Of a stretch of DNA of 64,000 bases, positions 1 through 64,000 are shown in pieces. Both the position numbers and the translations under genes were made by a program. Positions within the stretch are counted from its first letter, which is position 1; each line of letters starts with the position of its first letter. The stretch is taken from assembly GCA_965649765.1 (NCBI GenBank), contig OZ287754.1, forward strand, positions 35,712,001 to 35,776,000, given 5' to 3'. The notes beneath the pieces are model-generated. The model saw nothing but the letters and a program-made list of their open reading frames with translations, was not told the origin of the DNA and searched no databases. Origin of the DNA: Bispira polyomma (taxonomy: Eukaryota).

Positions 1-149
1 TCTATAAATGTTATTTGTAGTGGGAGTGAGTATATGGACTGGTATAGCATGGAACATGCAATAGTTTGGGGAACAGTCAATATAAAAAATATTCCAATAG
101 TATATCATCTAGATGACATTTGTTTACAGATTAGTCCTGCTAGACTACA

Positions 150-1280
150 AAATAGCATAGAAATTCTGAAATTCGGGGTGCCGCAAGGGTGTGTGCTTGG
201 ACCACTCCTATTTTCATTATATACTACACCCCTTAGCAAAATTGTTTCCTCCTATTCTTCTCTGAAGTATCACTTCTATGCAGATGATACACAGATTTAC
301 GTGCACCTTACTCCTAATACATCATTTGGTGCCCTGGAAGTCCTTCAGAAATGCTTAGCAGATGTTCAAAATTGGATGCCGCTAAATAAGGTCAAGCTAA
401 ATCCTGCTAAAACCGAATTCATATTGTTTGGATCGGGCACTCAACGTGCTGAACTGTCAAATTCTTTTCCTGCAAACATTCTTGGGACACTGTTATCCCC
501 AACTGATAAAGTGAGGAACCTGGGAGTTTTGTTTGACAGTGATTTTTCATTTTCCAGTCATATCCAATCAGTGTGCAAGTCATGCTTCATTGGTCTCAGA
601 GACCTTAGGAGAATCAGGAGGTACCTTCCAAAATCGGTTGCAATAACGGCAGCAAATGCTCTGGTTAGTAGCAGACTGGACTACTGCAATTCATTGTATT
701 GCAGCTTGACCATAAAGGACATAAAGAAATTGCAATGCATCCAGAACTCATTGGCACGTCTGGTCAGTTGTTCTGCTCAGCTTTCAAATGCTTCACCGAT
801 TCTGAAGTCACTCTACTGGCTCCCTGTTAGGTATCGTGTGTTTTTAAAACTGCTACAATAGTATATAGATTTCTCGATTCAGGTTTGCCTAAATGCTTTG
901 AACCACACTTGAGTCACTACAAGTGCAATGTCAACACCAGGAGAGCTGCTCCCAAAAATAGATTGCTTCTTGTTCCAAAATATAAGTCCAAAGTACACAA
1001 GTCAAAGGTTCACTTTGATAAAAGTTTTGCAAATGATGCCCCTACCCTATGGAATAGTTTGCCTCAACACATTAGGACAGCTCCGTCCCTGTATTCCTTC
1101 CGGCGCAGTTTAAAGACCTATCTGCTCAATGATGCATTCCCTCCATAGTCTCTTTCCCATTCTTGGTGGACGTATTGATGACGACTTCCTTCTGTCTCTC
1201 ACCTATGTTTTTTGACTCTGGCTGTGGTTATTTTGCGCCTTAGAATTTGTTACAACGAAAATAAGCGCTAAAAAAAAAGT
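150..1280 (+). mobile_element. 5'-truncated L2/CR1-group LINE, 3' end of ORF2 (reverse transcriptase), frameshifted, with 3' UTR
   Basis: ORFs 34-861 and 885-1148 carry GVPQGCVLGPLLF, FYADDTQIY, KLNPAKTE, SRLDYCNSL, LWNSLP and LKTYL, all typical of L2/CR1 RT. There is a frameshift near 845 and an A-rich tail near 1270. Confidence 0.9.
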
Positions 1281-14899: not shown

Positions 14900-15790
14900 A
14901 GGACATATAGCACTATCCCCCCCTTAAGGGGGAGCAGAAGAGATTTGCTATTTCTTGGACACTAACTTGTTTACGTTTTGGTTTAATTTCACCTTTTTTG
15001 GGGTCAATAGAAAGGGTTGTGGAGGGCGGGATTTTTTTTTCACACACACATCCCCTGCAAAATTTCCCTGAACCTCTTTTGTTTTCAACTTTTTAGATTC
15101 ATTAAATGCCTCCAGCCAAGCAGTGTTCCAAAAAGACCTAGTTTTTATGCTTTCGGGGCTTTCTGGAGGCTTCTCCCGTTTTCCAGGCCCCTGCAATTGA
15201 TTTCCCTATGTGCATTAAATTTACTAGTGAGGCCAAAACACTTGGCACAACCATGTTTTAAAATCATTCCAGCAAAGGCATAGTCACCTGACTGGGTAAA
15301 AGTGCCTTTGTTGTAGGCAGTACAGGGTACAGTTTTACTTATTCCGGAATTTTTTTGTGGAAACAGTTGAAGTAGTTTCACAACTATTTTCTTTAATAGT
15401 ATGCTGTGTCAAGCGAGCTCTAATTTCATGAACAGATACCATGTCATGCCAATTAACTTTCCCCTTTTCCATTTCGAGTAATAGAACACAGTGGGTGCTT
15501 TTGGCAGTATATTATGACGTTTCCATGGCATCCCTCATTAATTCTACTCCGTATTGCATCATGTTATTTTTAACTACATTTTCTGGTTCCTCTAACATAC
15601 ATTGTAAATAGCCTTGATACCACATAAGTGGAATAAGTTCATCATAAGCTGGATATTTTCTACTAGAGTTTACATAACAATGTTCATGTGGCCCATTAAT
15701 ATGTTCTCTAATGGTATGCTCACCAGTAGTAATAAACCAAGTTTTGTTACCTTGCTTCTCTGGTGAGGAGGCTAGCCTGTTTTTATGTTG
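14900..15790 (-). mobile_element. DIRS-order (Ngaro-like) retrotransposon remnant a: gag C-terminal half and start of pol
   Basis: Manual translation gives KQGNK...YPAYDELIPLMWYQGYLQCMLEE...MRDAMETS*YTAKSTHCVLLLEMEKGKVNW and PCTAYNKGT...HGCAKC, homologous to gag of the 42.6-49.5 kb element. Confidence 0.8.
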
Positions 15791-16998
15791 TTTTAAGTGC
15801 GTGTCGACTTGACGTTGGATGTGGTCATTCTGACGCAGAAATTTTTGACTAGGCAGTAGTAAGTCCTCGGAATCCTGGCAGTTGTAGTGTCCACGGTCAG
15901 CTGGTCTACTTTCCTCACAACGGCCCTGTTCAGCAGCAGATCTATCAGCTCATCTGGTAAAAACAGGAAGGCCCCCTCGTTGTTTAGACTCCATGTCATC
16001 AAGTGATCTCAGTCTTTGTCACCCATCAGCAATTCATTACTGTCGGCGATGTAATTCGGACAGACTTTGTACAGGAACATAATAAAGAAAACTACTTATA
16101 TAAAAGTGTATTAAAGAAAGGCATAAATTAAAAGTAATAAAATTTCGGGAGAACAATTACCTTTTTAGATTAGGTACAATCGGGATCTGGTCAACACTTA
16201 ATCTAGAAAGGCTCATGACTTATTTGAAATAGTTTGAAATGGATTTTTCATCCATTATAGGACACTGTAGAGTTTGATTTATATAAACAGCATGAAGTCA
16301 TAACTAAAATTAGCAATAACAATTCATTTCTTTATTGGACTTTACCCAATGCAGTGCAAAAGCAATGTAAATTCAATTTACACCTACATGTATGTGTACA
16401 TGGATTAAAAACTGTTTCAATCACACAATTTACATTTGGCTGCCTACTATTACAATGAGGAAGGAAGGAAATGGTTTCTGACACTAAATCCAGTTAAGTG
16501 AGTCTAGTCTTCACAAACAAATCAGTTAATCCATGGCTTCCCATTAATTCGTATCAAATTAATCTGTGCAAAAGGCATATTGGAAGAAAAAGTGTATTGT
16601 GATCTTACAACAAATTAGGGCAATTTTGAAAAGAAAATTACACCCCAAGAAAAGATGCATTATAAATGTAAGTTTATCAGTAAAACAAGTAATAACTGGA
16701 ACATTCAATAATAAGCTTTAAACCTGTGATTATTTTCAAACAATTAACAATAATTCATCATCATGTGAATTAATTATATAATTCAAACATTTAAGATGTC
16801 TAGTTTTCAATTTTAATCCAATCTCAAGTTTGGCTAGTTTTCCTTGCCAATCTAAGATGGGATAGCTCATCTTAAGATAGGCTGCGAAACTTATAAGTTG
16901 GCCTGTTGCCCATCTTACGATTGGCCAATTGTAAGTTAGGGTTTGACATTTACACAGTACAATGACAAAAATAATTCAGCCATTAAATACAATATCAG

Positions 16999-18637: not shown

Positions 18638-18849
18638 GAAAACGCCCACACAGTCAGAGGTGCATGTTCCATGGCTCTGAATGTCGCACAATGGAATATT
18701 ATATCGATGTCACCCTAGAGCGACGGAAATCATGGAATGCGGGGGGGAATCCTGCAGACTCAATCTTGCCAACACTAGGTGGAGGTTGTGACGTAACCTA
18801 GAATCTGTAAGGGGAACCCATTCACTCTCCAGCTTATACTGAAAGAGTG

Positions 18850-19330
18850 GGCCATTATTTGAGCCTTGGGTTATGGCCAACAGATTCCTACTGCTAGATG
18901 GGACACTGAAATTTCAAGTGGTAACTACCTTCTGAGCCCGGGTCCTTCTAATTCTGTCTGTTTTCGGAGTTTCCCCCCAAGAAATATTGCCCTCCTCCAA
19001 TTTACAGAGGACAATATGTGCCCCCTCAGCAGTGTTCTATGAGAAGTCATGGCCCTCATCCACCAATTCAGATATATTTTTGAAACCTAAACCCATTTGG
19101 CCATAGAGAGGCCATAATAGGAAAGTATTGTTTTCAACTGTCCACCTATTTTCAGGCCATGACACTTGGCGCCTGTCTCATTGATGTGGGTGAGTTTACG
19201 TAGTCTTGTATCTACTGCTGCCTGAATATGGTGAGACTCCGTCAGTATCTGGACGGATGGTACCAGTACATCGTCAGGCATAGATTCCCACTCAGCTTGG
19301 TCTGGACTGGCTGCCATACTCACACTGATG
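18850..19330 (-). mobile_element. DIRS-order remnant b: internally deleted gag
   Basis: Translates in pieces as DDVLVPSVQILTESHHIQAAVDTRLRKL, RQVSWPEN, LSMAKWV and DEGHDFS*NTAEGAHIVLCKLEEGNISW. Confidence 0.8.
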
Positions 19331-21265: not shown

Positions 21266-24200
21266 TTAATTTATGATCTTGTCTATCCTGAGGGTTTCTT
21301 CGTCAATGTCAATAACAATGCCCATACATGTAACTCGTTTACTGGGAGGTACTAGTTTACTGGGGTTTATAGGAAGACCTAAATCTGGCAGTAATTGCTG
21401 TAAAGTATCAAAAGCTAAGGTAGCCTTATCTTTATGTTCTATGAGTATGAAGTCATCAATGTAATTTATAACTGTGTAACGTTTTTGTTTCATTATGAAG
21501 ATGATACAGTCATAGGTCATCATAAAAGCTGCAGTCCCATGAGGAAGTCCAAAAGTAAGACTTAAATTAAGGAAGCATTGCTTTTTCAGATATAACCGAG
21601 TTTCAAACAGTCATAAGGGTCTATTCTTAGGTTACGAAACATGTAAGCTATGTCCACTTTTGCTAAGGTCGTCTTAGGTCCTATGTCCATAATGAGAGAG
21701 GTTATTTAATCAATGGTGGGTAATTTTAAAGTGAAGTCAATTGTGTCGTACTTTGTTTTAACAGTGCAGTCGTTTACAGAGTTCCCTGCTGGGTGAGATA
21801 AATTCATATAAGACAGTGCTTGTCAATGTCTTTAGGTTAAAAGTTGAGAGCAAAGTATGTCGGGGTGAAGGTGGGAACAAGCTGGGCCCATTAAAGTGCC
21901 TCGTTTGAGTTCTGTGACAAAATATTTATCAACAGCTTCTGGGAAAAATCTATTGGTATTGGTTTTTAACATTTTGAACAGTTAATCTATCTCTATCATA
22001 AAGTAAAATGGGAAAGCCAAATTCAATGTATTGTAATATGATATTGTCCGGAAAGTCTGTCAAATATTTTTTCCAATTTTCGACATTGAGGTTACTCTTA
22101 AGAGGTATCCTGACTTGTTTATAATTAGAAACTCTAGAAGTCTTAACAATATCAGCAATTTCAATAAGTTTGTCATATGAATTTATGTGAACTTCTCGCT
22201 TTTCTGGGCCTACCAATTCAAAGTTATTCTGTCTGTGTGGTATAAAACCATAAGTTTTATCACTAGAAAAAGTAAAGGCCTCCTGTTTGACATTGTCAAT
22301 ACTAGTGTCTGATGATTCAAATGTCAAAATGTCATTAATCATGACGTCTTCATTATGCACTAATGTAGGTTTTGAATCATAGAGATTTCATTATGCACTA
22401 ATATAGGTTTTTGAATCTTAACATTGTCATTATGCACTAATATATATTCCAGGTTTGTGTCATTGGGTAAGGGTAAGGGAACCTGATGATTATTGTTTAA
22501 ATGGTTCTGGTGTTGAAAATTTTGTTTGCAGATCTTGGCAATGATATCTGTATAATAAAAGGTTTGTCCAATTTTTGTATGTGTATGTGCCACATTATGC
22601 TTTGTAATTTTTGACTGATTGGATTGAGTGTAGTTTAAGACTGTAGTACAACTGGTTTTCACATAGGATAATGACCACATATGAACCAGTGTATAGGGGT
22701 TTGATGTAAGTACCACATATTATGACAATAAGTCCATTTGTATACACCTGAGATACATGGATCATCATGACAAACAATATAACAATAAGTTAGACAATCA
22801 TGATTAAAGTTACTGATACTAACATAAATGTCTACTGTACAAGAAACAAATGATGTCTTGTGACCATTATTGTCACCCTGAAACTAATCCATATTTTCCA
22901 ATTTAACTGGCAATTCTTGCCAACATATGTCTTTGAAAGGGCTACTGTCAGGCAATGCTTGTGATGTCTTACTGGGATCACCATAGCTCAGTTGAGCAAA
23001 TGGCTCATTGAATTTACAACTCAAATTATTTATAAAATTATGCTTAGTACTGTCTTCCTTACAAATTTTTCCATTAATGTTACTGTTTAAATCACTACTT
23101 CCTGTAAGCACACAATGACTATTAACAACATCAAAATTGAACTTAAGCTGAGTAGCTGTGGTGTCTGTTAGCAGTCTGTATCCCTAGTGGGGTGCGTTCA
23201 CGGTCGCGTTTGGGCTTCCATGGATTTTGTTGTATTTTGCTCGGGATGCAGATTCATTTTCTTGTTAAGTTGAAAGCAATTTGCACAAATATGTCTAAAT
23301 ATAATATTGTTGCCTTCGTGATCTTTCTGATGTTGGCACACATTTTTTTGGTAATGTCTGCAAGGCATCTCATTATTGTTGGAAGACGAGGTCGAAAAAG
23401 AATTGCTTGAGGGTGTAGTAGTGGAAGTAGCATTTGATATGAGGGCCTGAGAATAAGAAAGTCTGTTCATTGTCCATTTGGTGTAATCGACCCAACTCAG
23501 ACGCCCCTCTTCAAAATCATGCATATTGCTAAGCATAGGCGCCACGGGCAATCTCCAAGGAGATGGTGGAGGCGTCCTTGAGGGTGTCTGCTTACTCAAA
23601 GAGCATGGCCCGTGAAATGGCAGACTTTTTAACTTCAAGTATATTTTGAATCTGCCCAGCAGCAAACTATGAGACTGATAACTTATCGAAGGAAACTCGT
23701 TTCTCGCTTACACCGGATAAGCAGGCCTCATTCGGCCAATGCTTCATGGGGTCAGATACACACACTTCGGAAGTATTATAACATCCTGATTTACGTTTGG
23801 TGGTCAGCTTACCTTGGAGAGTTTCATCTTTGGCCCAGGCTTCATATTGTGTTAGCCATTGAGAGACCTCATTCTGGATGAGCAACAACTGCTCCAGAAC
23901 TTCGGGAGTCGGTAGAATGGTGTCTTTGAAGGTACGTTGGGTTGCTTTGTGGTCATACTGGTAATGCAAACTAGTTGGTTGACGTGTTGAGAAATCTGCT
24001 GTGAGAGGTTGGGGCGCGAACGAGCTGGTGGTGTTTCCTCTATGGGTGTCATAAAGCCCTAGTATAGTGGGTAACTCTGTGTGAGAACCTCAAGGTGCGT
24101 TATGAATAAAAACACGAGTAGTCTCTGTCTTTTTGGATTTTAGGTCCCAACACATCTTCTTGTAGTTTAGAAACTGTAGTTAATAATGTCTCCATCATAG

Positions 24201-29601: not shown

Positions 29602-30272
29602 TCACCACTTTAATGTGTACTGACAGGAATGGCTCATCACTTTGATGTGTACTGACAAGAATGGCTCACCACTTTAATGTGTACTGACAGGAATGGCTCA
29701 CCACTTTAATGTGTACTGACAGGAATGGCTCACCACTTTAATGTGTACTGACAGGAATTGCTCACCACTTTAATGTGTACTGACAGGAATGGCTCATCAC
29801 TTTAATGTGTACTGACAGGTATGGCTCACCACTTTAATGTGTACTGACAGGAATTGCTCACCACTTTAATGTGTACTAACAGGAATGGCTCACCACTTTA
29901 ATGTGTACTGACAGGTATGGCTCACCACTTTAATGTGTACTGACAGGAATTGCTCACCACTTTAATGTGTACTGACAGGAATTGCTCACCACTTTAATGT
30001 GCACTGACAGGAATGGCTCACCACTTTACTGTGTACTGACAGGTATTGCTCACCACTTTAATGTGTACTGACAGGAATGGCTTGCCACTTTAATGTGTAC
30101 TGACAGGAATGGCTCACCACTTTACAGTGTGCTTGACAGGAATGACTCACCACTTTATTGTGTACTGACAGGAATTGCTCACCACTTTAATGTGTACTGA
30201 CAGGAATGACTCACCACTTTATTGTGTACTGACAGGAGTTGCTCACCACTTTAATGTGTACTGACAGGAATG
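29602..30272. repeat. 32-bp minisatellite (CTCACCACTTTAATGTGTACTGACAGGAATGG), about 21 copies
   Basis: Head-to-tail, near-identical units with no unique spacers. Confidence 0.97.
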
Positions 30273-30864: not shown

Positions 30865-31100
30865 CTATCCCTTAAATATCATATCTTTGACCAGTTTCTG
30901 AATATCTCCCATGTTGGCGTTGCCGTTGCCCACAGAAAGGCGCATTCTGCTATTGCTGGGGCCCGGGATTGGGGGTTTGTGGAGGCGGCGTCTGTTGCTG
31001 GGGGCAAAGACTTCCCCGCCCCGCGAGGGTGGGCTCATGTCTTTGTCCTGTAGGGTGGTGAGGGCAAAGTCTAAGTTATCAAAGCCCAGGATACCAGGTG
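30865..31100 (-). CDS. Terminal coding exon of a putative secreted peptide precursor
   Basis: GC-rich island preceded by a strong acceptor TTTTTTCCTCTCTTTCAG (phase 1). It encodes (T)PGILGFDNLDFALTTLQDKDMSPPSRGGEVFAPSNRRRLHKPPIPGPSNSRMRLSVGNGNANMGDIQKLVKDMIFKG*. The phase matches the donor at 53305. Confidence 0.65.
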
Positions 31101-31392
31101 CTGAAAGAGAGGAAAAAAGACACAATAATTACATACAACAAGAATACCAAGATACCAGGTGCTGAAAGAGAGGAAAAAAGACAATAATTACATACAACAA
31201 GATTACCAAGATACCAGGATCTGAAAGAGTGGAAAAAAGACACAACAATTAGGCCCAACAAGAATACCAAGAAACCAGGATCTGAAAGAGTGGAAAAAAG
31301 ACACAATAATTAGACCCAACAAGAATACCAAGAAACCAGGATCTGAAAGAGAGGAAAAAATACACAATAATTACATACAACAAGAATACCTT
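31090..31392. repeat. 59-61-bp tandem repeat (5 copies), each containing the splice acceptor of the adjacent exon
   Basis: CTGAAAGAG(A/T)GGAAAAAA occurs at 31101, 31162, 31221, 31282 and 31343. Confidence 0.92.
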
Positions 31393-34300
31393 GATACTAA
31401 GAAATTATGAGAACTAGTTTTGTGCCACTTGGAATAATGTCAGCACCTTTGTTCAGGTCTTATTTTTTATTAGATGTAATGCCGGAAGTAGTGTAGAATT
31501 CTATTATAATAATGTAATAAGATTATGCATTTTAACGAGAGCACAGAACATAATTAATTGACCTGCTAAATGCAGCTATTAGTAGTCTCCCAAAAATTAC
31601 TTAAAAAGGGATCAATAGGTATCCACTAAGTATCTTTAATTATAACATGACATATAATGCAAACTGTAATATTATTCATAACTTTCGTCAATAATAAGGA
31701 ACTATTTTCTTCATTTGGTGTACTCCAATCTTCATGCGTTGTTTGTTTCTTTCTAAGTGCTGATGGTAGAAAAATGGCCTAATTCTTAAAAAATGTAATT
31801 TATCATACCTTGCAGAGATGTGTAGGTAGTTACACATGGAATAAGTGACAGGACTACTCTATTATCTTTGTACCGGGGTGTGCTAATAAAATAGAACTGT
31901 ATTTACAACTTCTAATATTATTTATGTGCTGAAACAAAAATGGTAAGATTAATGCCCCTTGCCTTTAGTTTTGATCTGTATAGTACTTCTGTAATTATAT
32001 ACTTAAAGTATAAAGTCTGGTGTTTTCAATATGAAAGGAAATGAAAAAAACAAAGAAACAGAAATAGCAGTGAAGGATTAACTAAAAACCACGACGCACA
32101 AAATAATAGGTCAAATTCCAAGATGGTAATTAATTTTATATTTCATTTATATAATCCCCGATTTTAAAAGCTCAAAACTTAAGAGATGTGTGTTCCACTT
32201 CTAGTTTAAAAATAGATAGGTTTGAGTACAAATTAATATTAAAATATATAGATACAACCCGACGTCATTTTACATACTCTATACAAATATGCTACTATCT
32301 GATGTGTATGTGGATAAATAACCATGTTGTTGTTTATAATAAATTCAATCATATGTATAGCTACAAAACTTGAAATATTTAGAATCTGCTAATCTAAATG
32401 TTTTAACAATTACACAGTCATCCCAAGTAGAAGGGTGTCATGTAGATATATAATCCTCTTTGCAGCAAAAACAACTTTTTTTCTGACAATTATTAAGCTG
32501 TTATTTTATCACACCTTGCCAAAAGTTTTCTGTTTTAGAAGCTTTTATTATTCCCCTAGTTGTTCCTTGTTTTTGATACTATATCCTTTATGCTGGCAAC
32601 ATCACTACGGACTTCAGAAGGGTGTGTTTGATAGTACGGGCGTGTATTAGAAGGTACGTAGAATCAGACATCAGGCCACTATGGTGTGCCTCAACATTTC
32701 ATGTGATATGAACTGCCAGTGAGAAACTCGATACTAAATATAAACTAAATGGACCACAATGAGAGGCCAGCTTATTACACATTTTGACTGAATAATTTCA
32801 TGTTGTAAAAATTATACAAAATATAATGGTAAAGTCTTTTTACTTCTTAGTGCTTTACACGCAAAAAGTTACGCATTGCCACATATTGGGGTTTAACTTT
32901 TAAGACATTTAATGTTTTAAGTTTCACGTTTAGAATGACTTTATATAATGCTTTGCAACTTTTCCAATAAAAAACGCTATCCCTTTGATAAGATGTTGAT
33001 CGGGGTTCTTAAAGAATCCTAGTCTAATTTCATTGCACAGATATTACTATGATTTGTAAGAAGTCGGTTCATTAACTTTACAATAGCCTCACTATTAATC
33101 TCACAAATTGAACCTGTCAGAGTCATTATTGCTGCATGTCATTTTATCTTTAGCTTACTCAATCAGATTGACAGATAGTGTGCGATGACACTCTCTATTG
33201 ATGTCAAACTGTGTATAAAACCAATACTTACTTTGTGACAGTCAGTCAGTTTCTTTGATGTGATAACCACACTGCCAGACAGTGGATTGCAAACAGTCAT
33301 TTGCATAAGCCAGCTCTTATCGCCTACCTAATTGTCTGTAAGTAAAAAGCCAGTGACTTTTGTCATAGTGATGTCATAACTCACTCCCACATCAAGTCAC
33401 TGCCTGCTGATTATTACTTCAATGGTTACTTGTACAAAAACTCTAGGCGTATCTATCGTTCTATGCAATACTACAATGAGTGAGTACATTGATGTAGGTG
33501 ATTCTTTTAATGGTATTTTGGTGATACCTACATTCTGTGACTTTGTGGTTACTCCCTACATAAGCACAGTCCCCAATCATCAGGCACCTAAAATTAAGGT
33601 GGCCGTGACCTTGCCTAATAAGCCTTGTTCAGTTCACTGGGGTTTTCACCTACTCTAGTGTCTATTCGTTTGTTTTTTTAAAGCAGAGGACAAAATCCAT
33701 TATTAATACGGAAAAATATTAAGAGATATATATCAAGCTTGTGCAAACTTGTTCTACAAAATTTGCTTGATAAGCAACCCCTTTCTAAGTTACACACAAT
33801 ATGCCATACCTTCATTTAACCTACGCTTCCATGCATCAGATATATGTCAGTCGACATCTGCCGATTCCGTTTATCTCAATAATTACAGTGTAATACTCCT
33901 GTCTAACTCGATCGTAGCCCCTGACCATTATGATTATGCAATCGGAGAATACTTGGATATGTTGAGTAGGTTGTCTTTGATATTCAGGCCACTCAGGGTC
34001 CTTTGGCGAGATGCAAGTAGGTGCTCATGGACCAATAAGTCATGTTAGGACAGTTTATTTTTCCATCCAACGACTTATTTTTTCAAATGGCCCCTCCCAG
34101 GACCCAAATCGCTAGAAAACACATCTATCCACATTCCAGCTTATCTTTCCATCCCTAACGATAGGTCGGGTTCGTACCAACTTATAGTCGCGCATCCCCA
34201 AATTATCAAGTCGTGTGCCAATAAAAGGTTGTTAGAAAGGATAACTCGGGCTCTCCAAAAGATAGGTCGGTAGAACCCCCTCCCCCCCCCGCCGATTAAA

Positions 34301-43017: not shown

Positions 43018-43827
43018 ATTAATATAGTTAGAATAAAGCAGTAACATGAATAAAGTGTAAAAGAGTGTAAAGTAAAAAAAAAAATAAAAGCAACCCTGTT
43101 CTAGCTAAAAGACTAAAAAATAAACTAAAAGCACATCTAGTTTAGAGTCCCGTGAATCCTTATGTGATGTACCACTAACTTACTCAGCCTTACTCGCTAG
43201 CCTAATGCCAGCCCTTGTTACATACGCAGAGGTTGCAAATCGAATAAATCGAGTTACAATTTGTACATTAAGGTATTTGCTGCACTTGATCTTGTGAGTA
43301 GATGGATCAGTGAGGCTTGATTGCTGATAGACACAGAGCCTTTGTATGGACCATTGTTCCATGCAATCTGAAACTATACACTAACGGTTAGACGTGTTCA
43401 TTGTGTGAGGGCAGCCTGTGCCTTTACTTTTTGTACATATACATTTACAACATTCTTTGACATTTAAATCATGAAATACAATACTGAAAACATTAATGTG
43501 AAATACAATTTGTGAAGAGGTTATATCTTCTCCTGGCTGCAGCTATAAAAGAAAGAGGGTCCCATTAAGGGGGCTGGTGGTAAACCAGTCAAGGGTTGGA
43601 GACAGCAAGGAGGGACTCCTGAGGGACCCCAAGGAGGCACCGAGGTGAAAGACTGCAGTCGAGCTATGCTGCTGACAGGTCAAAGCCCCGCCCCGGCACC
43701 CCCCCGCCCCCCCCTGTACATGAGGGCGTGAAGTGGAAGAACAGGAGCCCCAACTTGCGCAGCTTGCTCCCGGACGACGCTATAGCTGAAAAACAGGCGT
43801 AAGTAGGGGATGAGGGTGGGAACAAAA

Positions 43828-44020
43828 TGTATATATTAAAAATGGCGTCCTGCCTTGTTGACTTTAAGCTTAATAATGAACCCCTTAGCTATATGGCGGG
43901 AATTCTTGCCTTAATTGGGTTAATTAGCACCAATCATTTCTGAGGTCACCAGGACAAGAATGGTTTTAATAAAAGGTCTTACTAGCACTGACCCTGCTAG
44001 CCCCTCCGGGCTACCTTACA
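43828..44020 (-). repeat. Split direct repeat A2 (193 bp)
   Basis: Identical by eye to 49302-49494. It abuts B1 and so reproduces the circle junction. Confidence 0.96.
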
Positions 44021-44413
44021 CAGTGCCCTATTTGACTTGAAGTGATGATAACTAAATAAGAGAATAGCCTTGGGATAATTAGTTTATTCTATGTTAATCT
44101 ACTTTATATACAGAACTGAAGACTAAGCCCACCGGGTTTAAGGTTGTCATAAGTGACAGCTTAAACTGAGATTAAGAAAGTTTAAGTTAAGGTTACCCTA
44201 ATGTGAGATTAAGTTTCCAAGTATAAGGTCATCTTAATTTAAGATGCCAAGTTTGAGTTTAAGGCCATCTTAACTTGAAGATGGTGTTTTAAGTTTAGGT
44301 TAACCTTAAATAGAGTTTTTATTTTATTTGAATTTTGAGTTTGTGATACAGGAGGGCTTAGCCTTGATAACATGAGTATATTATTTTATGTATATTTTCA
44401 AGTAAAACAACAC
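44021..44413 (-). repeat. Split direct repeat B1 (393 bp)
   Basis: Copy of 42624-43017. Confidence 0.96.
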
Positions 44414-44423
44414 CAAACCCAAC

Positions 44424-45413
44424 TTAGGAAGTAGGGAGAGAAAGCAAGTTTTGAAAAGCCAGGGCTACTTTGTCTGAGGCGTTATGATCTGTTGTTATGT
44501 ATTTCCAGACACACTCAGATGTCCAAGTGCCATGGCTTTGAATTTCTTGTAGAGGGACATGGTTATTGAAAGCCAGGGTGGCAGCTGATCGTCTGAAATC
44601 ATGAAAGGCAATTGGGGATTGATTTAAACTGAGTCTTGACAAATTTTGCTTTAGGTTATGTCTTATTTTTGAATCTGTGAGAGGCCCCCATCCATTTGCT
44701 GCCTTAAACTGAAACAGAGGTGAATTATTTGAGCCTGGACAAATGGCAAGAAGGTTTCTTATGGCTGCCACTGGGCACAAGACTGAGTTGTGTATGCGTG
44801 GAACTTTAAGAATTTTGATTGAATTTCTGTTTTGGAGAGTCTTGGACCACTTAATAATAAGTTGAAGCCCCGGGGGTGCAAATAACACATCAGCCCTGGC
44901 CAACTGTTCTAGCGGATTGTAGGTAGCCACCGTGTGTGGGACCAGGTTAGAAATCCTTAGAAAGGAAAAAAAAGGCTAGTAGATAGGCTGCCTTAAACAC
45001 CTGGCCCATGTACATTGAATCACAGGTTTGTACTATTTGAGTTAGCAGGGAGATGTCAATGACTTTATTGATTTTAGCTTTGAAAGGTCTTTGTAGAATC
45101 ATTGCTTTTTCAAAGTATTTTATACGTGGATCTGCAAATGGACTTGTGTCAATGCCATATAGGCTAAGCTTTGCTTTTATAGCGGACAAATAGTTGACAA
45201 TTGATGGCTGGGATACTTTACTGGCTAATAGAACCTGCAGAAATGAAAGAACAAATAAAACTGAAATCTGTGTCAAATCGACGCCTACAAATACTGTGTA
45301 AGCAATAAAAACCTTGAACATATTTTGGTAGGCCTGCTGAGTGGCAGGCCTGAAGGCTTGATGGGCTGTGTGAGCCGCTTGACCTGCTAGCCGACGCACC
45401 AAGGGGGGTAAAT
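44424..45413 (-). CDS. Tyrosine recombinase (YR) of element d; one frameshift in a homopolymer near 44970
   Basis: ORFs 44947-45402 and 44424-44930 join via FLRISNL (catalytic Arg). HDFRR (HxxR) and HGTWTSECVWKY (W...Y) are present. Confidence 0.92.
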
Positions 45414-45423
45414 CTGAAATAAA

Positions 45424-47867
45424 TTATATACTCCAGTCAATTGCCAACATTTGATCTGGGACCGTCACCCAGCATGGGTCTGTTACTAATTGCTGTAATA
45501 TATTTTCTGGGTGACTGACCTTGTGCCACCTAGATAACAAATCTGCTGTTACATTAAGTTTGCCTAAGATGTGGACTGGCCTGATATTAATGTCAGCTTT
45601 GGCTACTTCCATAAAAATGTTGCGTGCAATTGCTGCCAGGGTTAGATCTCTGGTTTTGCCTGAGTTAAGAATTGTTACTACCGCTTGGTTATCACAGTGA
45701 ATGACCAGTTTTTTGCCTTGCCATATATCTTGCCACACTCTTAGGGCTACTAATATATTCAGCATTTCTAGATGCACTATGGTCATATCTAAGTAATTGA
45801 GAGGAAGTTCCTTTGTGTACACTATGTTATTACATCTGCCACCCAGACCCGTTAAGCATGCGTCTAGTTCAATATGGTCAGTGACCGGGCTATGGTCGAA
45901 GAATGCTTTGCCATTGAATTTGCCTACAAATTTTGTGAACCAATTTAGATCTTGGAAAAAGAGGAACTCAAGCCTAATTTGTTTTGTGTCATGAGCGTTA
46001 CGCAAGACGTCGAGCATTCTATTTAGAAACACTCTGGCGACCCTTACGCACTTGGATATGTAGAGAAGCGAGCCCAGCAGTGATTGTAATTCTCTTTTGG
46101 AGCAATGCTTTTTATCTACCCAGGTTTCGCATATTTGAATAATTAGGCTTAATTTTGCAGGTGGAACTTCCTCTGTAAAGTTTTTTGCGTCAATAAGGAC
46201 TCCAAGACAAGTTACTCTGCTGGTCGGAGGGACGAGCTTTTTTGCACTATTCGCGAAACCTAGATCTTTGACCAGTTCCTGCAAAGTTTTATAGGCGTCA
46301 TGGACGTCAGGTGCGTTGCCATACCCAATGACGTCGTCGATATAGTTGACGACGTCATAGCCTCTGACGCGCATCATGAAACGCATTGCGTCACTGAGGC
46401 GCTGAAAAAGAGCACTTCCGTGCCTGTAGCTAAATGGCAGGCACGTATCTACGTAGTATTCGTTTAGTTTGAGACCTAGTAAGTCGTATTCTGCTGGGTC
46501 TAGCTTAATGTGGCGAAACGCACGACTTATGTCTAGCTTATAGATAAGGGCATTTCTGCCCAGTTTTATGATCTCGTTGGTGACATCGTCAATGGTGGGA
46601 AGTGTTAACAAAAATTTTGAGCCAAGGTATTGATTTGGATGTATAGCTGCGTTAACTGATTGACCCCGAGGAAAGCTTAAATCTATAATAACCCTTCTGT
46701 GAGGGGCGCCAGGTTTTTCCCTCGTCATAAACGGGGATATATGTAAATCCTTGATCGGGGGTTCTTTAAAAGGGCCTAATATGGCACCATGATTTTTCTC
46801 TTCAGTCAGGTAAGCTTTAACGTCATCTGTGAACTCACACGCCGAGAGGTGATTTTGATCTTTATGTGCTAATTTACAAGTCCTGTCAAAGTCAAGGGGA
46901 AAACCATACTGGATTAAAAACGGTAATTGGGTGTCCCAATAACCCTTTAGGAGTTCTTTCCAGCGCACGTGGTTAAGTTCCGACTCGACAGTGAATTGCT
47001 TGTTCATAAAATTGAATTTATTGCTGTCTTTTATTTCTTTGTGGAGCTGCAGAGCTGAAAATTTATGCTCGTTTCCTTGATCAGTTGGGGGGTTTTTTAA
47101 GGGGCCCAGAGGAATATAACCAAATTTGGCCCGATTTTGACTATTCCATTTTTGAAAAGTTTCATCAGTTTAGCCTTGGCTAGTACTTCCCTATGCCGAG
47201 GTTTTACCTGTAATTGAAGGTTGTATTTGTCGTCGTGTGTGTCAGCAGAATAAGTAATTATTTTGCCTTTGTGTAATGGGCTAGAAGTGACACGAGTGTC
47301 ACAATCAGGGATATCACACTCAATGACGGATAGAAGGGGGTCAAATCGGTTGCGGAGCTTGACTCCATTGTGTTGCTTGATTGGTATTTTACCACTAGAG
47401 GATTTGTCAACCTTTCCATCCTTAGTATTTGATTCTACTGTGGACCCAGCACACAATGCTGTTTTATTCTTGACACCTTTTTGGCTACACACACTTGTAG
47501 CTCTGAATGGGCTAGTAGAATCTGACCGTACACATTTATTTTTATTTACACTATACACACTATTAGGGTGACTGCTGGGGAGAGTTTTGACCTTCGGAAA
47601 GCTTTTGTTTTTATTTGTTTTGACTTGAAATTGGCTGTTTGCTTTAATGACATTTAGGGGTTTTTGCTGCACAACTTGTGCATAGGATTTATGTACAAAC
47701 CTGGCCCAGTCTGCCCTCCAGTTGTCACTCCTACCATTATATACATGAGAATTATGAATGTTTCTTACAGAGGTGAAACGTGTTCTGCTCTGATAGTCAC
47801 TACATTTGTCAGTCTTATTGTAATTCTTGAGCGGCACTGCAGTTTTGCAGTGCCTTACTCGTTTTTT
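45424..47867 (-). CDS. Pol (reverse transcriptase + RNase H) of element d; one frameshift near 47170
   Basis: A 527-aa open core has RVIIDLS, KLDISRAF, YIDD, DACLTGLGG, HLEML, CDNQ and ADLLSR. An upstream extension (FGYIPL) runs back to the gag-end slippery site. Confidence 0.95.
47833..47867 (-). promoter_or_regulatory. Predicted -1 programmed ribosomal frameshift signal (gag to pol)
   Basis: A_AAA_AAC at 47867-47861, a 6-nt spacer, then a perfect 9-bp stem GGCACTGCA-AAAC-TGCAGTGCC. Confidence 0.8.
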
Positions 47868-48911
47868 GCATTGTTTTTCCTTCTGCAATCTTTTTCCGAA
47901 TGTGGGAGATTTTTGCCTAGAGCAGAGCACGTTGCACAAACATGGGAACAGTCTACCAGCCGTCTCATGGTCCCCTTTTTGAGGACATGTACCTTTCTGA
48001 AAGTAAATACACGGCATACCTCTTTTACTGTTACTTTTGTTTTGACCCTGGGAATGTGAAACAGCATGCAAATTTGATCCCCTTTGAGCATGAGCTCGTC
48101 GAATTCTGTCAATTTTTTGGGTTTCGAGCCAATTCACCTTGCCCTCCTCCATCTTACACAGGAGGACAGCATGGCTGCCTTTGGCAGCATTCTAACCAAA
48201 GTCGTGGCAATCTTCCATTACCTCAGACATGTATTCAAGCATTGCGTTTCTTACCTGGAGGTTAGTTTCTTCCCTTATTATGGTACTAAACCCAGATACC
48301 CATTGCGCCATAGACAAATTGTCATATGACATACGAGTTTTAGTTTGTCCGCCCAAAATAAAGTTTTGTGGCCACGGTACTTGTTGCCTGACTCAAACAG
48401 TCTCTGTTCCCCCCCTTTGTGACTTGAAATTACCTGTTTGGTTCATCTGTTGTAAGTCCTTCAGTCTGGTGTCCACAGCTCTCTGCAGTTGATCCGATTG
48501 TCTGAGGGTCTGGAGTGACGGTACCATGAGGTCATCTAACTCTGTGGTCCAGCGGGTCTGCTGCCTGCCATAATCTGTCGTGTGCAAGGGGTTAACTGGC
48601 TGAGGTAGGCTCGTTGACTGAGCACTTGAGAGTGAATGTTCGTTTATCACAGGTACAGCTGATGCTCTCTGAACTGCATTAACTTTAGACTGTCCATCAG
48701 TTTCCACCCTCTTTTCAACTACCGACATCCTGCTTCCTAGATCTTTAAGCTCTTGGAGTATTCTCAAGTTTACCTCCGCTGCCGACAGAGCAGAGTCACT
48801 AGCATTATCTTCAGTACTAGTGTCGACGTCCTGCCAGGGACAGTTCGCGTTAATAGGTCTAGTATGCTTAGTGCCACATGCCGAACAGTTGTATAGTTTA
48901 CGGGGTGCCAT
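47855..48911 (-). CDS. Gag-like ORF1 of element d; in-frame TGA (48393-48395), TAG (48192-48194) and a frameshift near 47945
   Basis: N-terminal CSACGTKH..C, central WPQN...YDNLSMAQWVSGF...MEEGKVNW, and a C-terminal Cys/His knuckle CIYFQKGTC..H..HVCATC..H..C. Homologous pieces occur in five other copies. Confidence 0.85.
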
Positions 48912-49301
48912 CCCTCGTGCAGCTCATATAGAGTTACCTTATTACAGTTTCTAGTCCAAAATTCCGTGGGTTATAGTCTTTCCACTGTCAATGTTTATAT
49001 CTAATTTCACTGAAAGATAATATACACAATCGTGCTTTGATAATTGCGGATATTTGGGCTTGTGGTTTTTCTAATATAATTTAGAAGACGATTAAATATT
49101 AATGAACTGAGAACGTCCCTTAACAAGTTGCCCCCACAATAAAGCCAGAGCAATATTCGCATTTATCAAAGCATTTGATTCCTAGAAACACTCCAGTAGG
49201 ATGGCTGCGTCTTCAGTTGGTCATCTAGTACATTCCTTGCTGATTCGGCTTCAGGTTATTACATTAAAGTCCAAAAAAAAAAAACACACAGTAAAACAAA
49301 G

Positions 49302-49494
49302 TGTATATATTAAAAATGGCGTCCTGCCTTGTTGACTTTAAGCTTAATAATGAACCCCTTAGCTATATGGCGGGAATTCTTGCCTTAATTGGGTTAATTA
49401 GCACCAATCATTTCTGAGGTCACCAGGACAAGAATGGTTTTAATAAAAGGTCTTACTAGCACTGACCCTGCTAGCCCCTCCGGGCTACCTTACA
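49302..49494 (-). promoter_or_regulatory. Split direct repeat A1, probable element promoter
   Basis: Identical to A2. It contains ATTGG (CCAAT box), TTCCCGCC (E2F-like) and CGCCATTTT (YY1-like) motifs upstream of gag. Confidence 0.75.
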
Positions 49495-50711: not shown

Positions 50712-51085
50712 TTTGGTTTATTCAGTCTGGGTTATTCAGTCTGTGGTTTAGTCAGTCTTATGGTTTAGTGAGTCTATGGTTTATTGAGTATGTGGATTAT
50801 TAAGTCTTTGGATTATTGATTCTTTGGTTTATTGAGTCTTTGGATTATTGAGTCTTTGGTTTATTTAGTCTTTGGTTTATTGGGTCTATGGTTTATTGAG
50901 TCTGTGGTTTTTTGAGCCTTTGGTTTATTGAGTCTTTGCTTTATTGAGTCTGTGGTTTAGTCAGTTTGTGGTTTATTTAGTCTGGGTTTATTCAGTCTGG
51001 AGTTTATTTAGTCTGGGGTTTATTCTGTCTGGGTTTATTCAGTCTGGAGTTTATTTAGTCTGGGGTTTATTCAGTCTGAGTTTAT
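50712..51085. repeat. Degenerate 15-17-bp tandem repeat (TTTATTGAGTCTTTGG-like)
   Basis: More than 20 imperfect units are visible. Confidence 0.9.
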
Positions 51086-57529: not shown

Positions 57530-60500
57530 AATGTCAAAGAAAGTGTTCAATTGTAGTGTGTGTTCTGATAAACACCGTCCTGTGGAAAAGAGATGTCGCT
57601 ATGCGTTGGGGCACAGTGTCACCGATAATGTAACCTCTGTTGGACATGCTATTACCGCTGAAGTGCCTGGTACTGTGTTTGGTACTGGTACGGGTGCAGG
57701 TTACGGAGGCAGCGCTGTGCTCACCCAGCGCCAATAAGGAATGTATGACTTCTAGTCAAACAAGTACTATTGTTGCTGGTAATGTGTCAGAGCATGTGGC
57801 TGAGGCAGTAATTCCTTCCCTAGATTACCTAAAAACAAACGATAATCTGCAATCTCAAGTAGACCAACCACTGCTTCAGTTGCAAGATTTGAATGAATGG
57901 GCAGAAGGTAAATTTAAATCACAATGGGGGAGGGGGCGTTGAAGCCTCTATCAAAAGGTCAGTAGATTGGCCCCAAAACTTTGTATTGTCAGGTGCTAAG
58001 AAAACTAGACCCACATACGACGAGTTGTCACTGGTTCAATTTATTTCTGATTTTATCCATTGTTTACAAGAACAAAAAGGTCCAGCTACTCGAGAAGCCA
58101 TGCTCGAGTACATGGCAAATTTAATGAACGATGCCCACGATTTCTCAATCGACTCCCACGATTTCTCGATCGACTGAACTGGACTGATGTGGAAAAAATT
58201 GACCGTATACGGAGGGCCCATGCCCAACGTCATATCACATCTAGTGCAAGTGGGTCTAGTTCTGCTAAGTCCACCAGTAGTGCTAAGGGTAAAATTCAGG
58301 CCAAATCCCAAGGTGTCAATTGCCGTTTTTCCAAGAAGGCACATGTAAATTTAAGGCTAGCCATCGTACTTCAGGTCAATTATTTAGGCACAACTGTGAA
58401 ACTTGTGATGGGGGCCATCAAACCAAACTATGTACCAAAAAGGGGTTAAAAAACTAAGGGGTAAAATTAAAGAGGTTTCATCTAGGACTGTTTACAATAC
58501 AGCCTTTTCTAATTTTAAATTGTTTGAAAATGTATGTTTTAACCATGTGTTGAAAAGTATGAAAAGATACTACATGGACATGGTGAAATTGGGAAACAGT
58601 GTTCCTAATGATTTCACACAAAATAAAACTGCACACGATATTGGCAGGAGAAATGAAAGGCGGGTTCTTTCAGGTGAAATTAAAAACAAATTAGAGAGAT
58701 AAACAAGTCTTCATGTCTTGCCAGTTTGCTTGACAGAAAGTTCAACACCAGCCGAGCTAAAACACGTCTGTCAAAATCAGTAAACAATGTGTTTCATTTA
58801 ATGAAAGCAAACAAGAACAATGGGGGTTGTGAAGCCACCAAAATTACATTTAACCAACAAGTCAATAAAGTGTCACGTTCTGTGAACACCAAAGGTAACA
58901 ATGAAAGTGGTGCTAACCCTTCTTTAGTAAGATGGGCCCCCTCCTCCATTTCTAAATTAACACCAATTAGCTCGGGTGGTGTCAACAATGAATGGGATTT
59001 TCAATTGCCCCTTCACAATAGGTATGCATTATTGGGTGAGCCAAACGTGGAGGGCGCAAATGTTAATGACCCAGTGTGGAAGGTCAGGCCTCTAACAAGA
59101 TCTTGCCTGTCCATAATAAAAAGGTAACCACTCAAGTGAATAGTTGTGATGACAAACATGTCCTGGAGGTATACAAAAGGGGCGATAAAAGACAACGTCT
59201 TAATAATGCTAAGCACGTTGACACCCACAAGATGTGGTAAATTCGTATTCATCCCTCTTGCTTCGTGGGGTTCTCGTGGTAAATGTGTTTGTCTTACATA
59301 AGCGCCTTAAGGCTTCTGTAACGTAAACACACAAATACGTTGTCGATAAATCATATTGCATTTACGAATTGTAACTTTAGCACATATACCTACAACAGCA
59401 GCCATCAAATGGTTCTTTAATGACCGTTTTACATATTTTTATATGCAAATACTATTTAGAACTTCATTATTTTATTGCATAATTATTAAAAAAAGCCGTA
59501 TAACGATACTTGTATTGTGACGTCACACAATTTGAAATTTATGGTGGAACGTCATATTTGTAAACAAGTCTCGCAGAGAGCCCCTTCTGTTGTGACACAA
59601 TACAAGTATTGATCCAGCATATATGAAGATATTATATAGACTACACAACTTTAAAAAAGGTGTATATTGTTTTGAACGAATTACATTTTTAAATATGTCT
59701 CCTTATGTTATATAAACGTAGAATACAAAGTATCTTGCTGTTTAGAAGAGTGTAATTTTAATGTTTTTCTATTTATCCCCATTTTTTTGTGATTTTATTA
59801 AAAAACGAATTTATTCACAATATTGCTAATGTTTTCCTTTTTCTAGTCATGTATAATATTTCAGCATTGATAGCTTCTTGGTATGTGTATTGTTTCACGT
59901 TTGTGAAGGGTGTACTAGATCGAATATTCATGTTTTTCTTACAATTTTACACCTTCTTATACATAGTATTTGTTGCTGATAAATTGTTAAAATCAATGTT
60001 AAAATTTATAAAATTCGGCACGAATTGTTATTTAATCTGTCCACTAAAATTATCACAACTCATAAAGCAAAAATCGTATTTGAAAATGAACTTTAAGGCC
60101 TTTATAACAATGTAGTGTATGTTTCTAGACAGTGATTCCTTTACAACGTGGTTTAGCGGCGATCGTTTTTTGTGTTTACGTCACTAAAGCCTTAAGCGGG
60201 ATGGGCGCCCAAACTATAAAGGGCTACAGATAGCAGTGATTAGACAACTAAAGGCCCCTGTGTGGGAAAAGTATTTGACAGGGTATTTGGACTGGGAACT
60301 CCCTCTACTGATAGAATTTGGTTTCCCTCTGGATTGTTGTGAAGTACATGTCTTCCAATCTGACCTTGAAAACCATTCTTCTGCTACTCAGTTTCCTGAA
60401 CATGTAAGCCATTATCTAAAGGAAGAATGCCAACTTGGGGCTATGTATGGGCCGTTTAATATTCCCTCTATTGACAGTATACACACTTCACCGTTCATGA

Positions 60501-63206: not shown

Positions 63207-64000
63207 ATGCCACGTAGAAACTATTCAGCATGTGGTGAAAGCCATACAAAACGTGATGAAAGTGAATTTTTTTACCATGAGGATGCTACGGATGATACCT
63301 CTAAAACGGATACTAGTGACATTTTAAGTGCTGCAGTAAATTTATGTATTTTACAAGAACTGAAACAATTAGGTGAACGTATGTCAATAATGGAAGAGCG
63401 AGTTGAACTTTCTGAACAGCAGACTGTAGCTCCCTCCGCTATGGAAATTCCTGTTAAAGTATCCACTTTTGGGATCATTGCAACCACCAGCAGCACTGAT
63501 GATATCTTGGTCCCCTCATTGAGCACCTTGAAGATGTCGCAACAACTACTGCATGCAGTCAACTCCAGATTAAAGGAATTGGTAGACATGAATAAATCAA
63601 GTAACCACAAATCTCAGAGAGGAGGTCCTGATACTGTATGAGTCAATTGACAAGTCACTTGGCCACAAAACCATATTTAATTACTAATAACTATATTATT
63701 CTAAAACTCGTATGTCTAATGATAGTCTTTCCATGGCGCAATGGGTGTCTGGGTTTGGTGCTATAACCATAGGTAGGAGTAATGTTGAAGTTAAAAATTG
63801 TATGCCTGATTATATCCAATATCTAATGGAGGACAGCAATGATTTTTCATAGAAAGCGGCAAAAGGCAGTCATGCAGTCTTGCTATGCAAGATGGAGGAG
63901 GATAAGGTCTCATGGCATGAAATCCCTAAGAATGATCACATACGTAGTACACATGCCTAGAACGTATCAATCAGCAACCACGGGTCGCACTCCTCCCATA
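63207..64000 (+). mobile_element. DIRS-order copy f: gag, runs off the window end
   Basis: Translates as MPRRNYSACG..LSAAVNLCILQELK..DDILVPSL..KSQRGG..WPQN..AQWVSGF..DFS*KAAKGSHAVLLCKMEE. Confidence 0.9.

What the first reader, a model, noticed from the sequence alone, without database searches (positions are those of the whole stretch)
48192..48194. Same in-frame stop codon in gag of four diverged copies: candidate amber/Trp recoding site
Seen in sequence: the position in the motif D-x-x-x-x-x-[*]-x-x-A-K/E-G/S-x-H is TAG in d (48194-48192), TAG in f (63850-63852), TAG in b (19039-19037) and TAA in a (15514-15512). It is TTG in c and deleted in e. Neighbouring Trp codons (WP, QWV, xW) are mostly intact in the same copies, and the downstream protein stays conserved. 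Copy d is young, with identical A repeats and an open 527-aa RT. From recollection, related Gag proteins have Trp here. Inference: independent decay is an unlikely explanation. A-to-I editing (UAG to UIG = Trp, as at the hepatitis delta amber/W site) or readthrough could gate full-length Gag and Gag-Pol, while the spliced YR mRNA would bypass the stop. A mutational hotspot remains possible, since other TE relics here also have stops at probable Trp positions (11571, 12414, 34766).
Basis: partly seen in the sequence, partly recalled or inferred. Interest (0 to 1): 0.85.

Follow-up and report, generated by a model that had tools for sequence, protein, structure and literature searches.

The report
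Shared stop codon in dead retrotransposons
Four decayed copies of a tyrosine-recombinase retrotransposon have a stop at the same tryptophan codon of gag; the coincidence is real and statistically odd, but all four copies are broken elsewhere too, so it looks like mutational decay rather than programmed recoding.

Summary
Copies d, f and b have TAG and copy a has TAA at one gag column. Copy c has TTG there, and e has lost the codon in a deletion. Homologous gag ORFs from a related metazoan assembly have Trp there in about 99% of cases, and hundreds of them are open full-length ORFs. The stop is therefore derived and not a family trait.

The recoding idea finds no support:
- All four copies are broken upstream of the codon as well.
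- The base after the stop is A or U, a poor readthrough context.
- No conserved RNA structure surrounds the site.
- In the related genome the same codon was hit four separate times (TAG, TGA, TAG, TAA), apparently in single copies. Other Trp codons there were hit about as often.

The coincidence is still unlikely under a simple neutral model, about 1e-3 to 1e-4. I also found that d and f share a second stop (TGA at another Trp position), although they diverged under purifying selection (dN/dS about 0.2).

Best reading: G-to-A nonsense decay at a stop-prone codon, possibly helped by a host-specific hot spot. A tolerated stop in the d/f lineage is not excluded, at roughly 6%.

The parts
43821..49494 (-). 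Copy d: tyrosine-recombinase (YR) retrotransposon, gag - orf2-like - RT/RNase H - YR, bounded by 200-nt direct repeats
   Evidence: Pfam hits to RVT_1, RT_RNaseH, Phage_int_SAM and Phage_integrase. tblastn of the ORFs of an intact relative, L001. Repeats.
48192..48194 (-). Flagged TAG in gag of d, at a column that is Trp in about 99% of homologues
48393..48395 (-). Second in-frame stop of d (TGA), at a column that is Trp in the nearest homologue clade; shared with f
47828..48911 (-). gag of d; a 1-nt frameshift near 47930 lies ahead of the C-terminal zinc knuckle
   Evidence: At 52 columns that are at least 90% conserved, d deviates only at the flagged Trp and at two columns beyond the frameshift.
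45424..47178 (-). RT/RNase H of d: 527-aa open ORF (45424-47007). Its N-terminal extension is cut off by a 1-nt frameshift near 47185.
   Evidence: It deviates at 2 of 144 highly conserved columns, and all 7 conserved Trp are TGG.
44550..45402 (-). YR of d, split by a 1-nt frameshift in a T8 run near 44970
43821..44020 (.). 3' copy of the 200-nt direct repeat of d (199/200 identical to 49295-49494)
49295..49494 (.). 5' copy of the 200-nt direct repeat of d
63207..64000 (+). Copy f: gag running off the window end. Stops: TGA 63639-63641 (shared column with d), TGA 63648-63650, TAA 63688-63690, flagged TAG 63850-63852, TAG 63958-63960. One frameshift at about 63650-63690.
18929..19299 (-). Copy b: gag fragment with the flagged TAG at 19037-19039 and an upstream frameshift. 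It abuts a YR C-terminal fragment at 18746-18895, so pol is deleted.
15262..15871 (-). Copy a: distant gag fragment with TAA at 15512-15514. It has no recognisable N-terminus, and there are stops upstream in frame.
23258..23927 (-). Copy c: distant gag relic with TTG at the column (23556-23558). It has stops at a Gln column (TAG, first base 23669) and a Leu/Met column (TAA, first base 23594).
57914..58406 (+). Copy e: gag relic. The flagged codon and about 18 following codons are deleted with a frameshift, beside a 21-nt tandem duplication at 58136-58177.

Best explanation
The window is a graveyard of six diverged, dead copies of a YR retrotransposon (DIRS order, Ngaro-like layout). The flagged stop is a loss-of-function mutation of an almost invariant Trp codon at the start of helix 3 of gag's four-helix core. 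TGG can become a stop by either of two G-to-A transitions, which makes it the most stop-prone codon. The stops arose by ordinary mutation in copies, or in their immediate sources, that were already leaving the active pool. They are not decoded.

The concentration on this one codon is partly the vulnerability of the codon and partly a coincidence that a reader hunting for oddities would pick out. Some extra local mutability may add to it.

What is shown: the ancestral state is Trp, all four copies are dead, there are no recoding signals, and the same codon is hit recurrently but sporadically in a related genome. What is inferred: the window's four hits are mutational and mostly independent.
For: - Relatives have W at the column: 61/62, then 156 of 158 covering it, then 404 of 408. 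287 ORFs run open to the gag C-terminus.
- All stops at the site differ from the Trp codon of relatives only by G-to-A.
- Each stop-bearing copy has further disabling lesions upstream of the site.
- In the related assembly, 43 nonsense-type ORF ends fall mainly at Arg (12), Trp (6) and Gln (6) codons. The flagged column was hit 4 times in 4 different families (TAG, TGA, TAG, TAA), none found to share its stop with another copy, and each has a W-bearing relative 81-98% identical.
- ORF ends before the four conserved Trp of relative P0001 number 3, 2, 4 (the flagged site) and 0, so there is no special hot spot there.
- There is no conserved RNA structure: z-scores run from -2.3 to +1.3 and RNAalifold finds 0 pairs. 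The +4 base is A or U.
- The AF2 model of an intact relative puts this Trp inside a confidently folded helical core with pLDDT above 90. A stop here removes half the core and the zinc knuckles.
- Copy d carries about five lesions, and its flanking repeats differ by 0.5%. By my arithmetic, one or two nonsense mutations are the number expected for a copy of that age.
Against: - The neutral model gives only about 4e-4 to 1.4e-3 for four of six copies sharing a stop column.
- In a, b, d and f none of the 12 other conserved gag Trp codons is a stop.
- In the window's decayed RT copies, which have 6-9 stops each, none of the roughly 11 conserved Trp columns covered is a stop.
- Copy d has only two nonsense codons in about 1450 codons, and both coincide with stops in f. 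Yet d and f diverged under purifying selection with saturated synonymous sites (dN/dS about 0.2).
- Two of the eight stops seen at this codon are the double change TAA (copy a and L005), more than independent single hits predict.
- An AU test does not reject a, b, d and f as one clade (p = 0.45), so a single origin is not excluded.
Confidence: 0.6

Rival explanations
1. Host-specific G-to-A hot spot. A cytidine deaminase acting on the single-stranded minus-strand cDNA (APOBEC3G-like, GG-to-AG on the coding strand), or some other context-dependent process in this genome, hits these particular Trp codons again and again. Independent copies therefore end up with the same stops.
For: - Every change at the site is G-to-A, and TAG dominates: 5 TAG, 2 TAA and 1 TGA over 8 copies.
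- The double change TAA occurs twice.
- Both of d's nonsense codons, and one of its two deviations at conserved RT columns, are G-to-A at a G followed by G.
- In vertebrate retroviruses and ERVs, recurrent Trp-to-stop changes are the hallmark of such editing (PMC5165236, PMC7308096, PMC4866542).
- DIRS elements replicate through linear single-stranded cDNA (PMC7192593).
- This would explain the shared stops of d and f without shared descent.
Against: - The other Trp codons have the same TGG context and are untouched: about 23 in d's gag, RT and YR, 12 in the gag of a, b, d and f, and about 11 in the decayed RT copies.
- At conserved columns there is no clear G-to-A excess over C-to-T, though the counts are very small.
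- The related genome shows no site-specific excess.
- No close pairs of copies were available in which to look for clustered G-to-A.
- GG context is built into Trp and Gly codons, so it is not independent evidence.
Confidence: 0.2
2. Tolerated or recoded stops. The d/f lineage, or a wider host-specific clade that includes a and b, stayed active while carrying UGA and UAG at two Trp positions of gag. The stops would be read through or edited A-to-I back to Trp, throttling Gag output.
For: - d and f are sisters (SH-aLRT 93) and share both stops with the same codon identities.
- Their divergence shows strong purifying selection before, between and after the stops.
- Apart from the stops, d's gag and RT are nearly pristine at conserved columns, and d and f share no other deleterious state.
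- Both stops, and a's TAA, would become Trp codons by A-to-I editing, and UAG is the favoured ADAR triplet (general knowledge).
- Synonymous identity between d and f is raised just 3' of the TGA: dS 0.77 against saturated elsewhere, over only 37 codons.
- A clade of a, b, d and f is not rejected.
Against: - No copy with the stop is otherwise intact in the window.
- Two stops in series would multiply the loss of Gag.
- The +4 bases are A/U after the flagged stop and G after the TGA, which favour termination. There is no readthrough motif and no conserved duplex.
- The stop type varies: TAG, TAA, and TGA in relatives.
- No stop-bearing lineage is seen among several hundred gag ORFs of the related genome, where the stops appear only in single copies.
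- A stop kept for more than one synonymous substitution per site should have left a large clade, and none was found.
- No precedent is known to me for a programmed stop inside a folded gag domain.
Confidence: 0.07
3. One dead ancestor. A single copy acquired the stop, or stops, and a, b, d and f are its descendants by segmental duplication or trans-mobilisation, followed by neutral drift.
For: It would make the shared column trivial. The copies lie within 50 kb of each other. An a-b-d-f clade is not rejected.
Against: - Pairwise differences are concentrated at third codon positions: d-f core 51/37/89 and b-d 58/39/81 (first/second/third position).
- dN is far below a saturated dS.
- On d's branch (0.26 amino-acid changes per site), neutral drift would by my arithmetic have produced several stops in gag and about 8 in RT. 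RT has none.
Confidence: 0.03

Closest known systems
Ngaro-type YR retrotransposons (order DIRS)
   Same: Layout is gag-like ORF1, RT/RNase H, then a tyrosine recombinase with an N-terminal SAM-like domain. There is no DDE integrase or protease hit. Direct rather than inverted repeats flank the coding region. The elements sit clustered among their own kind.
   Different: The gag family has no Pfam or PDB match. The full split-repeat (A1...A2) architecture was not worked out. Nearest relatives are only 54-59% identical, and all come from one unnamed metazoan assembly.
APOBEC3G-type G-to-A editing of retroviral and ERV cDNA, which turns Trp codons (TGG) into stops
   Same: Stops at Trp codons created purely by G-to-A on the coding strand. 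The same Trp codons are hit in independent copies. There is a GG dinucleotide context and a single-stranded cDNA intermediate.
   Different: No hypermutation is visible, since nearly all other Trp and G-rich codons are intact. No deaminase of this kind is established for the (unknown, probably invertebrate) host. Strand asymmetry could not be shown.
Hepatitis delta virus amber/W site (ADAR editing of UAG to UIG)
   Same: A UAG at a position where Trp gives the longer functional protein. UAG is the favoured ADAR triplet.
   Different: The HDV site lies in a defined duplex and both protein forms are needed. Here no duplex is conserved, the codon sits inside a folded domain, one copy has UAA, and the copies are dead.
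Programmed stop-codon readthrough (MLV gag-pol UAG with pseudoknot; TMV-type UAG-CAR-YYA)
   Same: An in-frame stop followed by conserved coding sequence in a retroelement.
   Different: Known sites lie at ORF junctions and have a stimulatory 3' context or structure. This one is mid-domain, the stop is followed by A or U, and no structure is found.

Membership tests
YR retrotransposon (order DIRS; Ngaro-like) | Reverse transcriptase plus RNase H | tested here: met
   RVT_1 E=1.4e-8, with weaker RT_RNaseH and RVT_3 hits on the 527-aa ORF of d. It is 59% identical to RT ORFs of about 800 aa.
YR retrotransposon (order DIRS; Ngaro-like) | Tyrosine recombinase instead of a DDE integrase | tested here: met
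   Phage_int_SAM_1/5 and Phage_integrase hits, all below Pfam's cut-offs. 52-56% identity to the 293-aa YR ORF of the intact relative L001. No integrase or protease hit was seen.
YR retrotransposon (order DIRS; Ngaro-like) | Split direct repeats (Ngaro/PAT) rather than inverted terminal repeats plus an internal complementary region (DIRS1) | tested here: inconclusive
   One pair of 200-nt direct repeats (199/200 identical) flanks d, and no long inverted termini were found. The A/B repeat layout was not resolved.
Programmed stop-codon readthrough site | The stop is present in the functional (intact, young) members of the family | tested here: not met
   Relatives have W, and 287 gag ORFs are open to the C-terminus. 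All four window copies are otherwise disabled. The source genome itself could not be sampled.
Programmed stop-codon readthrough site | Stimulatory 3' context (C at +4, CARYYA, or a downstream structure) | tested here: not met
   The contexts are UAG-AAU, UAG-AAA, UAG-AAC and UAA-UAU. Fold z-scores run from -2.3 to +1.3 with inconsistent pairing. RNAalifold finds 0 pairs.
Programmed stop-codon readthrough site | Downstream codons under purifying selection | tested here: inconclusive
   dN is far below dS downstream between d, f and b. This is equally expected if the stops arose after the lineages diverged.
ADAR amber/W editing site (HDV-like) | The target A lies in a conserved RNA duplex | tested here: not met
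   There is no consensus structure within 60 nt either side across 7 stop-bearing copies. No inverted repeat in d includes the site. A long-range partner is not excluded.
ADAR amber/W editing site (HDV-like) | A-to-G mismatches between RNA and genome at the site | not testable with these tools
   No transcriptome data are available.
APOBEC-type cDNA hypermutation | Clustered, strand-asymmetric G-to-A changes in a preferred dinucleotide context | tested here: inconclusive
   The stops are G-to-A in GG context. Nearly all other TGG codons are intact. Counts at conserved columns are too small to judge. No near-identical pairs of copies were available.

The most novel reading that the evidence does not exclude
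An active lineage of YR retrotransposons, at least the common stem of d and f, carried two in-frame stops (UGA and UAG) at Trp positions inside the folded core of gag for a long evolutionary time. It would have depended on A-to-I editing or near-cognate readthrough to make Gag, as a built-in throttle on its own expression.
Probability: 0.06. Interest if true: 0.8.

Novelty: already known. Interest (0 to 1): 0.25.

Why it matters
As it stands, this is pseudogene decay in a transposon graveyard. It is a useful caution: Trp codons are natural weak points, and the same one can be knocked out repeatedly.

If the minority reading were true, it would be the first retrotransposon known to depend on recoding stops inside a structural domain. 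It would then be a natural system for studying editing or readthrough as a control on transposition.

The shared pair of stops in d and f is the one piece worth a cheap follow-up, and it needs only the source genome and its RNA-seq.

Tried and rejected
1. Variant genetic code: rejected. The 527-aa RT ORF has no internal stop, and the ORFs end in TAA.
2. Suppressor tRNA or a known RNA element in the window: none found by ARAGORN or Rfam.
3. Finding close relatives of d and f in order to tabulate the codon:
   - An exact look-up of d's RT found nothing.
   - Word-index searches with gag and RT gave at most 57-59% identity.
   - An exhaustive HMMER search with d's N-terminal gag piece gave at most about 58% identity, over short fragments.
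   The source genome is not in the collections.
4. Bystander gag copies in the fetched related loci: none.
5. Universal hot spot at this codon: not seen. ORF ends before the four conserved Trp number 3, 2, 4 and 0. Two of the four hits at the site came from a search whose query ended exactly at the site, so they are biased upward.
6. Recent shared ancestry of the segment that holds the stops: rejected. Even the most similar patch (columns 274-320) has dN/dS of 0.24.
7. Naming the gag fold: no Pfam, PDB-sequence or Foldseek match.

Broken genes were read through only with X at the breaks.

Full report
WHAT IS THERE. The window is AT-rich (about 36% GC) and holds no known RNA family or tRNA. It contains six diverged gag copies of one retrotransposon superfamily. 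Copy d (43821-49494, minus strand) gives the anatomy. It has a gag-like ORF1 and an RT/RNase H ORF that is open for 527 aa. It also has a tyrosine recombinase with an N-terminal SAM-like domain (Pfam). Each part matches the ORFs of an intact relative, L001. Two 200-nt direct repeats, 199/200 identical, bound the element. This is a YR retrotransposon of the DIRS order with an Ngaro-like layout.

Copies a (15262-15871) and b (18929-19299) are fragments, and b's gag abuts a YR tail. Copy c (23258-23927) and copy e (57914-58406) are relics. Copy f (63207 onward) runs off the window end.

At one gag column d, f and b have TAG and a has TAA. Copy c has TTG, and e has lost the codon in a deletion with a frameshift beside a 21-nt duplication. 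Homologous gag ORFs, all from large contigs of one ENA assembly, have Trp at that column. The contigs carry C1q and tyrosine-phosphatase genes, so the assembly is a metazoan. The counts are 61 of 62 W, then 156 W and 2 L among 158 covering it, then 404 W, 2 L and 2 G over all members fetched. In a, b, d and f the other three conserved gag Trp codons are TGG in 11 of 12 cases.

An AlphaFold model of the intact relative P0001 (mean pLDDT 78, core above 90) places this Trp at the start of the third helix of a four-helix core, upstream of the zinc knuckles. A stop there removes half the core. The fold has no Pfam or PDB match.

THE COPIES ARE DEAD IN OTHER WAYS.
- Copy d also has a TGA at 48395-48393. 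It has 1-nt frameshifts near 47930 (gag C-terminus), 47185 (pol N-terminus) and 44970 (YR). The last lies in a T8 run and could be an assembly error.
- Copy f has five stops and a frameshift in about 245 codons.
- Copy b has an upstream frameshift and lacks pol. Copy a lacks a recognisable N-terminus and has upstream stops.

In every case translation would fail before reaching the flagged codon. Recoding it could not rescue Gag in any present copy.

NO RECODING SIGNALS. The bases after the stop are AAU, AAA, AAC and UAU. Folding 60 or 150 nt on each side gives z-scores between -2.3 and +1.3, with inconsistent pairing of the codon. RNAalifold over seven stop-bearing copies predicts no pairs, and no inverted repeat in d covers the site.

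THE WIDER FAMILY. I could not sample the source genome. An exact look-up failed, and the nearest gag and RT relatives are only 54-59% identical. In the related assembly, 287 of 395 ORFs with a close reference reach the gag C-terminus. Among the 43 truncations that look like nonsense mutations, the ancestral residue was Arg 12, Trp 6, Gln 6 and Leu 4. The flagged column was hit four times, in four different families. L002 has TAG, L003 TGA, L004 TAG and L005 TAA, and each has a W-bearing relative 81-98% identical. Two of these four came from a query that ended at the site, so they are biased upward. Counting all ORF ends, the four conserved Trp positions were hit 3, 2, 4 and 0 times.

Trp codons in general are weak points. 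This one is not special in that genome, and stop-bearing copies there do not appear to form lineages.

HOW ODD IS THE WINDOW? A model weights each column by its routes to a stop and uses the observed number of stops per copy.
- It gives 4e-4 to 1.4e-3 for any column being a stop in at least four of six copies.
- It gives 1-2% if d and f count as one lineage.
- The window's decayed RT copies carry 6-9 stops each, but none at the roughly 11 conserved Trp columns covered.

The concentration is therefore real. It was also noticed after the fact by a reader scanning for oddities, which weakens these numbers by an unknown factor.

A NEW AND UNEXPLAINED POINT. Copies d and f are sisters in the gag tree (SH-aLRT 93). 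They share not one stop but two: the flagged TAG, and a TGA at a column where the nearest homologue clade has Trp. These are d's only nonsense codons in about 1450 codons. Its RT has no stop, all 7 conserved Trp are intact, and it deviates at 2 of 144 highly conserved columns. Yet d and f differ mostly at third codon positions (core 51/37/89), with dN/dS of about 0.2 and saturated dS. Descent from a dead common ancestor is therefore excluded.

Two possibilities remain. Both stops arose twice, at about 1e-3 under the gag-only model and lower, by my arithmetic, if d's whole coding length is counted. Or the stem lineage stayed active while carrying them. An AU test does not reject a clade of a, b, d and f (p = 0.45), but their branches are very long. 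A patch of raised synonymous identity lies just 3' of the TGA (dS 0.77 over 37 codons). That is too small a sample to interpret.

VERDICT. The most likely account (about 0.6) is ordinary G-to-A nonsense decay of a stop-prone, structurally essential Trp codon in dead elements, with a coincidence selected post hoc. A host-specific G-to-A hot spot, for instance deamination of the single-stranded cDNA that DIRS elements use (PMC7192593), comes second at about 0.2. The same mechanism turns retroviral Trp codons into stops (PMC5165236, PMC7308096, PMC4866542). It fits the pure G-to-A pattern and the two TAA double hits, but not the many untouched TGG codons. Tolerated or recoded stops in the d/f lineage remain possible (about 0.07) and are the only exciting reading. 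The test is cheap once the source genome and its RNA-seq are at hand.

Noticed in passing
window 48393-48395 (-) and 63639-63641 (+): Copies d and f share a second in-frame stop (TGA) at a gag column where their nearest homologues have Trp. These two shared stops are d's only nonsense codons.
   Followed up: yes
window about 48270-48400 (-) versus 63630-63760 (+): Just 3' of the shared TGA, d and f keep unusually high synonymous-site identity (dS 0.77, against saturated elsewhere). This covers only 37 codons, so it may be noise or a nucleotide-level constraint.
   Followed up: partly
window 58136-58177 (+): Copy e has a 21-nt tandem duplication directly before a deletion of about 18 codons, with a frameshift, that removes the flagged codon.
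   Followed up: partly
window 18746-19299 (-): Copy b is an internally deleted element: a gag fragment joined almost directly to the C-terminal part of the tyrosine recombinase.
   Followed up: partly
window 44962-44976: The YR frameshift of d lies in an 8-base homopolymer and could be an assembly indel rather than a real mutation. The other two frameshifts lie in 3-base runs.
   Followed up: partly
L004:6001-11294 (ENA ERZ22147071 ctg31445l): An apparently young related element has TAG at the flagged column. Its gag is otherwise open, it has a 932-aa RT ORF, and it is 98.5% identical to a W-bearing relative. This looks like a fresh example of the same knock-out.
   Followed up: partly
P0001 (L001:7683-8717): The gag family has no Pfam, PDB-sequence or Foldseek match. 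The AF2 model shows an N-terminal knuckle, a long helix at residues 42-75, a four-helix core at 188-265 and C-terminal zinc knuckles.
   Followed up: partly
At 11571 a TAG interrupts ...IWCYTQ*QPLY... downstream of a GKT P-loop motif. These families were not identified.
   Followed up: no
window 29602-30272, 50714-51078, 31086-31397: Tandem arrays: 32 nt x 21, 16 nt x 23 and 61 nt x 5.
   Followed up: no
window 34-861 (+): An open 275-aa ORF with an RVT_1 hit (E=1e-15) from another retroelement at the window edge.
   Followed up: no
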